From Hamiltosporidium tvaerminnensis FI-OER-3-3 (taxonomy: Eukaryota > Fungi > Microsporidia), in contig CM061246.1 of assembly GCA_022605425.2 (NCBI GenBank), forward strand, positions 806,001-870,000: a stretch of 64,000 nt of DNA, in the 5' to 3' direction. Below the pieces are notes generated by a model, which saw nothing but the letters and a program-made list of their open reading frames with translations, had not been told where the DNA came from and searched no databases. Positions 47,175 to 59,564 of the stretch are shown piece after piece. Each line of letters begins with the position of its first letter. The first letter of the stretch is position 1. A program made the translations under genes and the position numbers.

Positions 47175-50100
47175 ATGCCCAACAAAAACCACCCACTTCC
47201 TCCAGAACATTACCGAAGACTAATAAACCTACCACTTTCATCAAAACACACACTTCCTTCTCTAAAATACCTACCACACTCACTTCTATACCTCTTTAAA
47301 AGTATACCGTTTCCATGGGAAAATATTAAATACGTTAAAGTTCGTTACCACCATAAAAATATATTAACGTTTGTCCAAGACAAAACACGTGTTACTGATT
47401 ATCAAAATAAATGGAAATTTATTTTTAATGAAATTTCTACCAAACAAACCCATATTCTCTCTTTTCCTATTTATGATGATAACCACCCGTTAATCAACTA
47501 TGAAGATATTGTTAACTATCCTTTACCAACACCCTTTAATATCAGTACTAATACAGACAGTAATTATAAGGGTGTTAATGAAAGGGATATAAAGAAGGGT
47601 GTTAACGATAAGAAGATAGTAGAGGGTGTTAACGAAAGGGATATAAAGAAGGGTGTTAATGAAAGGGATATAGAGAAAGGTGTTAATAAGTATAGTAGTT
47701 TAGAGGGTGTTAACGAAAGGGATATAAAGAAGGGTGTTAACGATAAGAAGATAGTAGAGGGTGTTAATAAGTATAGTAATTATAAGGGTGTTAATGATAA
47801 GGATATAGAGAAAGGTGTTAATAACAGTACTAATAAACAACACCATGTTAATAAGACCAACTCTAACCCCACCCTAACCCTAAAAACATGCATAAACAAC
47901 AATACTTCTTACAAATTACAGGGTCATAACTTCCTAAGAAGTAAGAATTCTCTCTTAACAGTAAGAAAACTAAACCTACTAATACCTAACACCCCCTATA
48001 CAAAAAACCCATCCCTTTCCACATATAATTCTCTTCCTATTCAAACTATAAATACTCTTACACACTCATATCATAAAATTGTATATCCATACCTCTACAA
48101 TAATATTTTACCAAATACAAACATTCCACTTGAAAAAATACATCCACAACTCACACACAATACTTGTAATTATAATAACAGTAATAAAGAATATAATTAT
48201 AACTGTAATAATAAAGATAATTATAAAGATAATAAAGATAATTATAACTGTAATGATAAAGAGTTTGAACAGGAAAATAAAAGAATTAAATACAATAATA
48301 ACACTTCATCTGATAAAGAAATTAAATATTTACAACAGCATAAACGCATAAACAGAAATAATACAAAAGAAGAAATAAACAGAGAATGCATAAACAGAAA
48401 TAATATAAAAGAAGAAATAAACAGAGAATGCATAAACAGAGAAGAAATAAAAACCCGCAACCCTCCTAACACATCCAACACATCCAATTCTACTAACACA
48501 TCCAATTCTCCTAACACATCCAATTCTCCTAACACATCCAATTCTCCTAACACATCCAACATATCTAATATTCCCTCTGAAACACCCCTTTTAAAACACC
48601 TCTACACTTACACTACAAACCCCTTAATAACACCTATCTCCCTATCCTTAATAAAACACACCTTAAAAAATAAAAAAGGTAAAAAATCAAATAAAAAAAC
48701 AATAAAACAAATCCTAAAAACAAAATATTTTCACACAACAACACTAGACTGGTTAGAAGTATCACTTTCTACCTTACAACAGTCAAAAAAAATTCTTACA
48801 AATATTTTACGCATAAAAAATATTTCTTACCTTTGCATTGACAATAATTTTAATATAAAACCAACTCGTACATTAACAACAAAAGAACGTAAAAAAAGTA
48901 GACTTGGTTCTTCTTTTCATTTACTTAGAGAAATACTTAAATTACTTAAACATGTCACTGATTTGTTTACTTTATATAGAAGTAATACTATTACATGGTT
49001 AACACTTACTTGTAATATTTATTATGTTTTTAGTCATGTTGGTACACTTACAGGTATTTATAGGTATAAGTATAAAGCTATGAGACAAATAAGAAGATGT
49101 AAGTATTTAAATGCAATAATAAAGGGTATGGTAGGGGGTAGTGTGGTATGGGGTGGGGATAGTAGTAGTGTGGTAGGGGTGGGGATAGTAGTAGTGTGGT
49201 AGGGGGTGTTAGTGATAGTAGTAGTGTGTTAGGGGGTGGTGGGGATAGTAGTAGTAAACAACACCCCTTTAATGACAGTAATAGTAAACAACACCCTGTT
49301 AATAATAATACTAATAATTATCACCCCTTTAATGACAGTAATAGTAAACAACACCCCTTTAATACCGCACCTAATAATTATCACCCTGTTAATAATACAC
49401 CTATTAATTATAACCCTCTTAATACTACTACACCCTCTTTATGGTCTCCTTTGTGGAGAGTATGGTTAGCATTTCTACGTGGTCATACTTCCTTATTATC
49501 CACATACTTATCTAACCTATCCTTACGTATGATAAATGGTAGGAAATATAATAAAAAGAAAATAACAAAACAAAGAATAGAAAGTAATTATGATATTATA
49601 TTACGTAACAGTATTAGAGATACAGTACGTAGATATGTACCACCTGATGTATATACAGAATGTGTTAAGAGTGTATTGTCTTATTATAGTGAAGGATGGA
49701 GGTGTTATAAGAGTAATATTGGGTTTTGTTTAGGGTTAGGTGTTGATAGTATTGTATCTAACCCTAGCCTAACCCTAAATAAATGCATAAACAACTATGA
49801 TAATAGTAAATGCATAAACAACTATGATAATAGTAAATGCATAAACAACTATGATAATAGTAAATACACCTTAACAACTCTATCACCCCCTTTAATAACC
49901 CTGTTATAGATACACACCTTAACAATACTATCACTTCCTTTAACAACTCTATCACCTCCTCTAATAACCCCCTTTATTCTATTATAAATCACTTCTTATC
50001 ACTTAAAGCTATAAATTATTATAATTCAACAGTTAAAACCTATAAAAGAATACTTAACAATAAAAAAGTAGATAAAACAGATATTAAGAAGAATAAAGGT

Positions 50101-59100: not shown

Positions 59101-59564
59101 TAGAGTGTTATGAAAGTGAAGGGAGTAATAAGGGGGTAGAGTGCTATGAGAGTGAAGGGAGTAATAAGGGGGTAGAGTGTTATGAGAGTGAAGGGAGTAA
59201 TAAGGGGGTAGAGTGCTATGAGAGTGAAGGGAGTAATAAGGGGGTAGAGGGTGGTGGATTAGAGGGTGGTGGGGATAGTAGGGGTATGTTAGAGGGTGTT
59301 GGGGATAGAGGTAGTAATATAAAGGGTATTAGTAATAGAGGTAGTAATATAAAGGGTGTTAGTAATAGTACCGATAATACTAATAAACAACACCCTGTTA
59401 ATAACATACCATATGAACAACACCCTGTTAATTTAAAGGGTTATTTTCTTGTTTGTGAAATGTGGAATTTTTATTTTAAAAGGGAATGGTTTGATGAAGA
59501 TATGAGTTATAGTCTTAAGATAGGATACCCTTTAAATTTCTATGATATAAGTTTTAGAGAGTAA
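47175..59564 (+). CDS. PRP8: Pre-mRNA splicing factor Prp8, inflated by ~17 low-complexity repeat insertions and split across 6 ORFs by frame breaks inside repeats
   Basis: Co-linear Prp8 motifs: LPPEHYRRLI; LKYLPH..IPFPWE; LDWLEV; KPTRTLTTKERKKSRLG; HVGTLTGIYRYKYKAMRQIR; WRVWLAFLRG; TKQRIESNYD; VDKTDIKKNKGKITRLYLK (unannotated frame ~50065-50125); [93 protein letters not shown]; Jab1/MPN region; C-terminal WNFYF..YSLKIGYPLNFYD. Confidence 0.95.
53484..54210 (+). repeat. Largest PRP8 insert: 27-nt G-arm repeat (REMVGGVSK) followed by ~30-nt C-arm repeat (TYHPLNNTT)
   Basis: AGGGAG(A/G)T(G/A)GTAGGGGGTGTTA(G/A)T(A/G)AA about 12 times, then ACTTATCACCCTCTTA(AC/GT)AA about 6 times. Confidence 0.95.

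What the first reader, a model, noticed from the sequence alone, without database searches (positions are those of the whole stretch)
47175..59564. PRP8 colonised by ~17 stereotyped in-frame repeat insertions (over half of a 12.4-kb gene)
Seen: conserved Prp8 blocks of about 80-550 nt alternate with inserts at approximately 47545-47895, 48160-48580, 49125-49435, 49720-49970, 50220-50495, 50880-51240, 51485-52195, 52475-53010, 53430-54235, 54515-55140, 55440-55710, 55790-56150, 56250-56390, 56780-57280, 57570-57970, 58160-58770 and 59100-59430. By eye these total ~7 kb. Repeat units are multiples of 3 (18, 27, 30, 36, 63 nt), while the non-coding array after EAF6 also uses 13- and 16-nt units; most inserts are stop-free in the Prp8 frame. 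Known: Prp8 is ~2300 aa and among the most conserved, length-constrained eukaryotic proteins. Inference: a recurrent, sequence-stereotyped insertion/expansion process seeds coding DNA here and selection keeps the frame, giving a ~4100-aa Prp8 with many disordered loops. Alternatively the inserts are removed by a non-canonical RNA or protein processing step; no consistent GT..AG ends are visible. This is the best candidate for an undescribed system in the window.
Basis: partly seen in the sequence, partly recalled or inferred. Interest (0 to 1): 0.93.

Follow-up and report, generated by a model that had tools for sequence, protein, structure and literature searches.

The report
Giant insert-swollen Prp8 in a microsporidian
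In a fungal parasite of water fleas, the only gene for the core splicing protein Prp8 has doubled in size through 17 repeat loops that are very probably translated, and it lies in a sharply bounded DNA island where a local mutational bias has reshaped even the conserved parts of the protein.

Summary
The finding is real, but it is a genus-wide feature, not specific to PRP8. The window is Hamiltosporidium tvaerminnensis (Microsporidia). Its single PRP8 (about 4,130 codons, against 1,960-1,990 in relatives) carries 17 inserts totalling 7.3 kb.

Five inserts break the frame in this assembly. Reads and H. magnivora contigs point to consensus errors. The other 12 have 0 stops in 1,613 host-frame codons (63-481 in other frames), are hydrophilic, and map to loops. 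They are therefore very probably translated, not excised; they are not inteins.

Every insert runs G-rich to C-rich. The conserved blocks run the opposite way, including at synonymous sites, and are evenly spaced (CV 0.38). The 15-kb island lacks GpC, CpG and TpC, and alanine has fallen to 0.6%.

My best guess at mechanism (inferred, about 45%) is recurrent break repair at module centres, with selection keeping the frame. The literature has one remark on similar MCM expansions (PMC6944219). This scan noted the modules before in other genes (s1-609382, s1-599485).

The parts
47175..59564 (+). PRP8, single copy, about 4,130 codons; five net frame changes in this assembly, all inside inserts
46800..62200 (.). 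Bounded island (PRP8, EAF6 and flanks) with sawtooth GC skew and depletion of GpC, CpG, TpC and GpA; sharp edges
46800..47174 (.). C-rich repeat arm upstream of the start codon, ending in a CCC-type motif; no matching G arm
   Evidence: CCC motif per PMC2803860
47545..47895 (+). Insert 1, G-to-C switch near 47817
48160..48580 (+). Insert 2, CIN-word type, no GGG core
49125..49435 (+). Insert 3, switch near 49254; assembly lacks one G at 49175
49720..49970 (+). Insert 4; assembly has 2 extra nt at 49869
50220..50495 (+). Insert 5; holds the 33-nt imperfect palindromic core (peptide GVNNSTNKQ then HP), whose 29-mer occurs 21 times on 13 contigs
50880..51240 (+). Insert 6, CIN-word 27-nt repeats
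51485..52195 (+). Insert 7, switch near 51991; two garbled frame changes that are absent in H. magnivora
52475..53010 (+). Insert 8, switch near 52669
53430..54235 (+). Insert 9, the longest (806 nt), switch near 54006
54515..55140 (+). Insert 10, about 200 aa; splits the U6-binding Pfam domain at human 1492-1505 / yeast 1564-1577, just before the 1585 loop
55440..55710 (+). Insert 11
55790..56150 (+). Insert 12, with telomere-hexamer runs in the C arm
56250..56390 (+). Insert 13, the shortest
56780..57280 (+). Insert 14; frame change here, in frame in H. magnivora
57570..57970 (+). Insert 15
58160..58770 (+). Insert 16, CIN-word units and telomere-hexamer runs
59100..59430 (+). Insert 17
59507..59718 (+). 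69-nt triplication of the last codons and the stop, each copy ending at the G core
59565..60583 (.). Intergenic spacer built as one more G-to-C module; here the C core keeps its TAA, which coding copies never have in the stop phase
60584..60835 (+). EAF6 (NuA4 subunit), behaving like one conserved block (C-rich upstream, G-rich downstream)
60836..62200 (.). G-rich arm closing the island; no matching C arm

Best explanation
The inserts are translated, disordered, Asn/Ser/Thr/Gly-rich loops made of a Hamiltosporidium-specific minisatellite family. They grow by tandem duplication and by copying between loci, inside discrete gene islands. SHOWN: they are in frame and purged of stops, sit in tolerant loops, vary in unit number between sister species, occur genome-wide in islands, and are centres of a strand-symmetric G-to-C switch whose bias reaches into the conserved exons. 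INFERRED: each module centre is a site of recurrent DNA breakage or fork collapse; the arms are prone to hairpins and G-quadruplexes, and no Ku was found. Resection leaves the top strand single-stranded on the left and the bottom strand on the right. Damage and error-prone refilling (C>T, C>G, A>G on the exposed strand) make the left G-rich and the right C-rich, and slippage or template switching adds units, which reinforces the site. Weak selection in a small, partly vertically transmitted population lets frame-preserving hydrophilic loops and semi-conservative substitutions (loss of Ala) accumulate. I put translation at about 0.85 and the break-repair origin at about 0.45.
For: Stops: 0 against 112 and 481 in the other forward frames; GRAVY -1.1 in the host frame against +1.47 in frame +1. 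The G core is in one codon phase 65 of 72 times, and the C core TAACACCC is never in the phase that would read TAA as a stop, although 12 intact copies lie in the non-coding spacer. Eight short-read contigs of other genes, and P0001, are open for 388-1,178 codons across several modules. Insert sites are in coil in 7 of 8 cases on an AF2 model of the Astathelohania orthologue (P=0.004) and at indel-prone orthologue positions (P=0.004). Species divergence is 0.3% in blocks and 3-5% plus unit indels in inserts. Third-position GC skew in blocks runs from -0.54 to +0.54 (p about 1e-10) and holds for homologue-aligned codons alone (rho 0.31, p 2e-6). The shift is a gain of C to the right and a gain of G to the left of centres. 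GC and AT skews are anti-correlated in the island (rho -0.24) and positively correlated outside. The direction fits the footprint at human meiotic breaks (ssDNA left of the break on the forward strand, C>N and A>N, excess insertions and repeat expansions; PMC7615360). Relaxed G4-type motifs: 64 in the island against 2 in 46.8 kb outside. The genome has a Y-family polymerase and a weak Spo11-like match, and no Ku was detected. Drift is argued in PMC6944219.
Against: No break, resection or mutation-rate data exist for this species. The mean module period (about 0.7 kb) is shorter than human resection tracts. AT skew at four-fold sites is not monotonic. Nothing explains why some conserved genes are hit (PRP8, UBA1, Ski2, VPS13) while RPC2, 24 kb away, is untouched. 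The regular spacing (CV 0.38 against 0.95; 0.28 against 0.75 when chosen among loops) is not predicted without an added interference rule. Translation is inferred from selection signatures; there are no peptide data.
Confidence: 0.45

Rival explanations
1. The loops are translated, but the polarity comes from transcription or chromatin signals. Each module is an internal copy of this species' intergenic architecture (G-rich gene-end arm, then C-rich CCC-motif promoter arm), bound by a general DNA-binding factor that phases nucleosomes and may create internal starts and ends.
For: The PRP8-EAF6 spacer has the same G-to-C build, and the island opens with a lone C arm and closes with a lone G arm, so the unit can be read as C arm, block, G arm. 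A CCC motif precedes microsporidian start codons (PMC2803860). Blocks average about 290 nt and are evenly spaced. The G core also appears inside conserved blocks, 23 times against 3.3 expected.
Against: It does not by itself explain tandem expansion, the loss of GpC/TpC, or why neighbouring genes lack it. A continuous frame over 12 kb argues against separate transcription units.
Confidence: 0.2
2. Telomerase seeds the modules: both ends of an internal break are extended with G-rich repeats and rejoined head to head, and the tract then diverges.
For: The polarity is that of a head-to-head telomere fusion. The telomere hexamer is the commonest tandem hexamer in PRP8 C arms (34 copies against 8.9 expected). 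TERT is present and no Ku was found.
Against: Chromosome ends are pure TAACCC with no copy of the octamer core. G arms have no tandem GGGTTA. The hexamer is rare in eight other module genes. Most module sequence is not telomeric.
Confidence: 0.1
3. A short mobile palindromic element (like MITEs or Rickettsia palindromic elements) inserted repeatedly into genes and then expanded locally.
For: A 33-nt imperfect palindromic core is shared exactly among many chromosomes. G and C arms share more k-mers as reverse complements than directly.
Against: Lengths run from 141 to 806 nt with no fixed ends. Two inserts lack the core. Copies cluster in islands and were absent from 17 long ORFs in 140 kb of sampled DNA. 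Insertion alone would not alter synonymous sites 100-150 nt away.
Confidence: 0.12
4. The inserts are removed or skipped at the RNA level (non-canonical splicing of G-arm/C-arm hairpins, or ribosome bypass), giving a normal-sized Prp8.
For: The arms can pair (MFE to -94 kcal/mol), and 3 of 17 fold clearly better than arm-wise shuffles (z below -3). A 200-aa loop beside the 1585 loop is hard to picture in a spliceosome. No RNA run was positively identified.
Against: Frame, stop and hydrophilicity selection. Most inserts fold no better than their composition predicts (mean z -1.3). Iso-Seq confirmed only 20-68-nt introns. Run X15, probably the cDNA run, has contigs crossing block/insert junctions and one lying inside insert 7; no block-to-block joint is among the 15 of 151 joints shown.
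Confidence: 0.06
5. The inserts are inteins removed from the protein.
For: Prp8 is an intein hot spot, and insert 10 lies next to site a (PMC6805012). Haag et al. raised the idea for MCM proteins.
Against: No Hint-domain match. No Cys/Ser start or His-Asn end. The composition (20% Asn, GRAVY -1.1) cannot build the HINT fold.
Confidence: 0.02
6. The inserts are long-read assembly artefacts.
For: The assembly does carry indel errors inside inserts.
Against: The same inserts are in short-read contigs of several isolates and of H. magnivora, and 20 DNA runs hold the stretch. There is one PRP8 copy.
Confidence: 0.01

Closest known systems
Asn-rich in-frame expansions in Hamiltosporidium MCM proteins (Haag et al., PMC6944219)
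   Same: Same genus, in frame, Asn-rich, splitting conserved domains. Probably the same family, though MCM genes were not examined here.
   Different: The paper gives two sentences, leaves intein versus expansion open, and reports no DNA architecture, polarity, islands or flank effect.
Low-complexity insertions of Plasmodium and Dictyostelium proteins (own knowledge; e.g. PMC2705789, PMC3140889, seen as search hits only)
   Same: Translated, Asn-rich, hydrophilic, in loops, variable in length, in an AT-rich genome.
   Different: Here the inserts share one DNA vocabulary across loci, have a fixed G-to-C order, are confined to islands, are evenly spaced, and come with directional change in the flanking exons.
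Rickettsia palindromic elements (own knowledge)
   Same: Palindromic repeats inserted in frame at surface sites of unrelated proteins in an intracellular parasite.
   Different: Those have a fixed length (about 150 nt), occur mostly once per gene and show no tandem growth or flank skew. Here there are up to 17 per gene, 141-806 nt long.
Mutational footprint of meiotic break hotspots (PMC7615360)
   Same: Mirror-image strand asymmetry around a centre, C>N and A>N on the exposed strand, excess insertions and repeat expansions, template switching.
   Different: In humans it is a slight excess of rare variants over +/-2 kb at short-lived sites. Here it would be near saturation, at sub-kilobase spacing, inside essential coding sequence. 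The link is inferred, not shown.
Prp8 inteins (PMC6805012)
   Same: Same host protein; insert 10 adjoins site a at the 1585 loop.
   Different: No HINT domain or splicing residues; 17 inserts rather than one.
Repeat-induced point mutation (RIP) of filamentous fungi (own knowledge)
   Same: Bounded region with TpA excess that affects coding DNA near repeats.
   Different: The depleted contexts are GpC, CpG and TpC more than CpA, the bias is strand-polar, G and C are gained on opposite sides, and no C5 methyltransferase was detected.

Membership tests
Prp8 orthologue | Ordered PRO8NT, PROCN, RT/RRM, U5/U6-binding, RNase H-like domain IV, PROCT | tested here: met
   single copy
Translated low-complexity coding insertions / coding minisatellites | In frame and stop-free in the host frame only | tested here: met
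   0 of 1,613 codons against 63-481 in the other five frames
Translated low-complexity coding insertions / coding minisatellites | Located in loops or indel-tolerant sites | tested here: met
   7 of 8 in coil; orthologue indel score P=0.004
Translated low-complexity coding insertions / coding minisatellites | Unit number varies between relatives in multiples of 3 | tested here: met
   9 of 11 indels against H. magnivora BE-OM-2 (small compensating 1-nt gap pairs not counted); the two exceptions lie in garbled assembly
Translated low-complexity coding insertions / coding minisatellites | Present in the mature mRNA and protein | tested here: inconclusive
   Run X15 holds the inserts and looks like cDNA, but is labelled DNA by guess; no proteomics
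Intein | HINT domain | tested here: not met
   no Pfam match
Intein | Cys/Ser first residue, terminal (His)-Asn followed by Cys/Ser/Thr | tested here: not met
   insert ends listed; the ends are approximate
Spliceosomal intron | No constraint on frame or stops | tested here: not met
Spliceosomal intron | Size and list of Iso-Seq-confirmed introns in this species | tested here: not met
   17 introns of 20-68 nt, none in PRP8; the list covers well-covered genes only
Spliceosomal intron | GT..AG ends | tested here: inconclusive
   Boundaries are diffuse; no block-to-block joint among those shown
MITE / Rickettsia-type palindromic element | Inverted-repeat core shared among dispersed copies | tested here: met
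MITE / Rickettsia-type palindromic element | Uniform length and defined termini | tested here: not met
   141-806 nt, diffuse ends
MITE / Rickettsia-type palindromic element | Target-site duplication, empty alleles | not tested
   No empty-site orthologue within the genus was available
Telomerase-derived interstitial repeats | Head-to-head G-then-C polarity | tested here: met
Telomerase-derived interstitial repeats | Unit equals the terminal repeat | tested here: not met
   Six chromosome ends have no copy of the octamer; hexamer runs occur only in C arms and mostly in PRP8
RIP | CpA-to-TpA signature without strand polarity | tested here: not met
   TpA is high, but CpA o/e is 0.8-0.9 while GpC is 0.4; the skew is polar
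RIP | RID-type C5 methyltransferase | tested here: inconclusive
   PF00145 has no match; a divergent gene could be missed
Break-hotspot mutational footprint | Mirror-image strand asymmetry in the direction expected from 5' resection | tested here: met
   against PMC7615360; standing composition only, not new mutations
Break-hotspot mutational footprint | Measured breaks or ssDNA at the centre | not testable with these tools
   no data

The most novel reading that the evidence does not exclude
Hamiltosporidium has an undescribed, locus-directed DNA-rewriting process. It marks on the order of 80 or more islands of essential genes, acts at evenly spaced foci about every 100 conserved codons, and writes a shared polar repeat vocabulary at each focus, possibly with a telomerase-related or templated step. 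It also drives strand-asymmetric substitution strongly enough to strip alanine from some of the most conserved eukaryotic proteins, while the spliceosome works with a doubled Prp8.
Probability: 0.25. Interest if true: 0.9.

Novelty: new variant of a known kind. Interest (0 to 1): 0.7.

Why it matters
Prp8 is among the most constrained eukaryotic proteins. This species splices its introns (mean 54% efficiency, PMC10542269) with a single PRP8 gene that is twice the length found in its relatives, so the 17 sites map where a working spliceosome tolerates 35-260-residue loops, one of them beside the 1585 loop. The island shows a local mutational bias overriding purifying selection in essential genes, with sharp borders and internal controls next door. 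That makes the open question of how low-complexity protein insertions arise testable with existing population sequencing of this Daphnia parasite. In practice, these genes are fragmented or mis-annotated in current assemblies, and their biased composition can distort phylogenies.

Tried and rejected
Assembly artefact: rejected. A second, insert-free PRP8: none found. Inteins: rejected. Known RNA families in the island: none. Conserved specific hairpins: weak, mean arm-wise z -1.3. Octamer at telomeres: absent; the odd repeats at one chromosome end look like base-calling noise. RIP: wrong context, and no methyltransferase found. Modules outside Hamiltosporidium: all 25 protein hits were from that genus, and 36 long Prp8 homologues, including Astathelohania and Encephalitozoon, lack them.

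Limits. No run on record as RNA holds the stretch, and the single read lay covered 48900-54850 only. Searches were input slips.
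Full report
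IDENTITY. A conserved piece of the gene is identical to an H. magnivora Prp8 fragment. The window is G000:C1:806001-870000 in a 21.64-Mb, 17-contig genome. Contig lengths and the 139 telomere repeats at the start of C1 match scaffold_2 of the Hamiltosporidium tvaerminnensis FI-OER-3-3 assembly (PMC10542269). That assembly is a merged Nanopore and PacBio CLR build polished with Illumina reads. PRP8 is single copy.

THE OBSERVATION. Thirty full-length homologues, searched against each ORF piece separately, align as colinear blocks from 47175 to 59558, and Pfam finds the Prp8 domains in order. The 17 inserts total 7,267 of 12,390 nt. Astathelohania contejeani (1,961 aa) and Encephalitozoon intestinalis (1,992 aa) have none. 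In this assembly the frame changes across inserts 3, 4, 7, 10 and 14. Contigs of three H. tvaerminnensis runs add one G at 49175, and two runs drop two bases at 49869; each change restores the frame. H. magnivora reads insert 7 (P0001) and insert 14 (P0182) in frame. The two frame changes in insert 7 lie in garbled 61- and 64-nt stretches, while the other nine net indels are multiples of three. For insert 10 the only support is a 16-letter gap in one H. magnivora contig. The natural gene is therefore very probably one ORF of about 4,130 codons.

TRANSLATED, NOT EXCISED. For the 12 inserts whose flanks share a frame, there are 0 stops in 1,613 host-frame codons, against 112 and 481 in the other forward frames and 63-159 on the reverse strand. 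The host frame is hydrophilic (GRAVY -1.1, 20% Asn) and frame +1 is hydrophobic. The core GGGTGTTA is in the Gly-Val phase 65 of 72 times. Its mirror TAACACCC never sits in the phase that would read TAA as a stop; coding copies in the His-Pro phase carry CAA, TAT or TTA instead, while the non-coding spacer keeps 12 intact copies. On an AF2 model of the Astathelohania orthologue (mean pLDDT 80), 7 of 8 insert midpoints are in coil (P=0.004). The sites are also indel-prone among orthologues (P=0.004). Between the two species, blocks differ by 0.3% and inserts by 3-5% plus unit gains and losses. There is no Hint domain or intein terminus, although insert 10 lies at human 1492-1505, next to the 1585 loop and intein site a. 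Published Iso-Seq confirmed only 17 introns of 20-68 nt, none in PRP8. Most inserts fold no better than their arm composition predicts.

A hint from reads. Runs X14 and X15 come from one sample of 2023, probably that of the assembly study. By my arithmetic on table 2, repeat-rich bins stand at about the same multiple of single-copy depth in X8 and X14 (57 and 51 times at 50293-50491) but 2-6 times higher in X15 (166 times). That suits cDNA rather than DNA, so X15 may be the Iso-Seq run. Its contigs cross block/insert junctions, and one (51899-52061) lies wholly inside insert 7. The tool labels the run 'DNA?' and warns against reading contig depth, so this is a hint only.

ANATOMY. All 17 inserts are more G-skewed at the 5' end than at the 3' end, and in the 15 with both run types nearly all GGG runs precede all CCC runs. 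This order reads the same on both strands. The centre of typical modules is a 33-nt imperfect palindrome, whose 29-mer recurs 21 times on 13 contigs. Two inserts use another word but keep the order. The conserved blocks run the other way: third-position skew goes from -0.54 in the first fifth to +0.54 in the last (p about 1e-10). At two-fold sites C/(C+T) is 0.46 just after an insert and G/(G+A) is 0.55 just before the next, against about 0.14-0.18 in control genes. The trend holds for homologue-aligned codons alone. Block lengths are under-dispersed: mean 293 nt, CV 0.38 against 0.95 for random breakpoints (0 of 20,000), and CV 0.28 against 0.75 when sites are drawn from modelled loops (P=0.004). 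The G core also appears inside blocks, 23 times against 3.3 expected.

THE ISLAND. The pattern starts at about 46800, where the neighbouring CHY-RING gene ends, and stops at about 62200. Inside it, locally corrected o/e values in conserved blocks are GpC 0.40, CpG 0.43 and TpC 0.73; outside they are about 1.05, 0.86 and 1.08. Only 1 of 140 one-kilobase windows sampled elsewhere reached the island's range. Alanine is 0.6% of the PRP8 blocks, against 3.2% in neighbouring genes and 3.3-3.4% in the microsporidian orthologues, and only 3 of 12 conserved alanines remain. The non-module parts of 24 other module proteins average 1.0% alanine. RPC2, the AP adaptor, AMP deaminase and an ABC transporter in the same window (names from their sequences, own knowledge) have no inserts.

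EXTENT. One 15-nt G-arm motif has 537 exact copies, clustered and nearly always in one orientation per cluster. Related motifs occur on 16 of 17 contigs. From C1 and C2 I estimate about four islands per Mb, so roughly 80 or more in all. A protein search with insert 8 returned only Hamiltosporidium proteins, among them Ski2, VPS13, UBA1, USP7, an AAA ATPase and a GPI transferase. Short-read contigs of eight such genes show the same sawtooth, phase lock and, to varying degree, dinucleotide loss.

MECHANISM. A bias that is mirror-symmetric about a point and decays into the flanks points to a DNA process centred there; transcription direction alone cannot produce it. At resected breaks the forward strand is single-stranded left of the break and takes C>N and A>N changes, with excess insertions and repeat expansions (PMC7615360). 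That gives G-left, C-right, as seen here. The arms are rich in relaxed G4-type motifs. The genome has TERT, a Y-family polymerase, UDG and a weak Spo11-like match, with no Ku or C5 methyltransferase detected. I rate self-reinforcing break repair plus drift at 0.45. Rivals: ectopic gene-boundary or chromatin signals (0.2; the spacer and island edges fit this well), a mobile palindrome (0.12), telomerase seeding (0.1; hexamer runs are enriched in PRP8 C arms, but chromosome ends lack the octamer) and RNA excision (0.06). None explains gene choice or the even spacing. These remain open.

PRIOR KNOWLEDGE. Haag et al. (PMC6944219) noted Asn-rich in-frame expansions in MCM proteins and could not decide between inteins and plain expansions. 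I found no paper describing the family, its polarity or the islands. This scan had already noted the modules in other genes and the sawtooth in this stretch; those notes are not independent support.

VERDICT. A real and unusual feature: a new variant of translated low-complexity insertions, with an undescribed domain-level mutational signature. Interest 0.70.

Noticed in passing
window 59507-59718: The last codons and stop of PRP8 are triplicated as a 69-nt unit ending at the G core, so duplications of ordinary coding sequence may be anchored on the motif. P0175 ends in a similar fourfold repeat containing Gly-Val.
   Followed up: partly
window 20041-23556 (-): RPC2 (1,171 aa) is well conserved, with normal codon use and no inserts, although scan notes report RPC1, RPA1 and RPA2 as heavily inserted. 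Subunits of one complex differ in whether they are hit.
   Followed up: partly
window 58160-59564: The C-terminal part of Prp8 (end of the RNase H-like domain and the Jab1/MPN region) aligns poorly and seems eroded; conserved Trp is kept at only 16 of 23 aligned positions across the protein.
   Followed up: no
window 60836-62200: G-rich arm after EAF6 with 13-, 14-, 26- and 124-nt units and GC skew up to 0.92, with no C arm after it.
   Followed up: partly
window 24000-26000: GC-richer (41-42%) stretch unlike its surroundings; not identified.
   Followed up: no
L007:150-1000 (G000:C5 start): The telomeric tract is full of irregular CCCTGG/CCCTAG-type units, most likely long-read base-calling errors left in the assembly.
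   Followed up: partly
G000:C4:420294-420659 (-): The telomerase reverse transcriptase gene lies about 5 kb from a module cluster at C4:425-432 kb.
   Followed up: no
G000 whole genome: No Ku (PF02735) and no C5 DNA methyltransferase (PF00145) were detected, although methylation patterns are reported for this species (PMC12449221).
   Followed up: no
G000:C8:203317-206088: One of the few clusters with module cores on both strands, probably two oppositely oriented affected genes; useful for separating gene-linked from strand-symmetric effects.
   Followed up: no
L027:163-2900 and L028:1377-4775: UBA1 and the GPI transferase are only partly affected (fewer modules, milder dinucleotide loss), and their neighbours are normal. 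They may be younger or weaker islands.
   Followed up: partly
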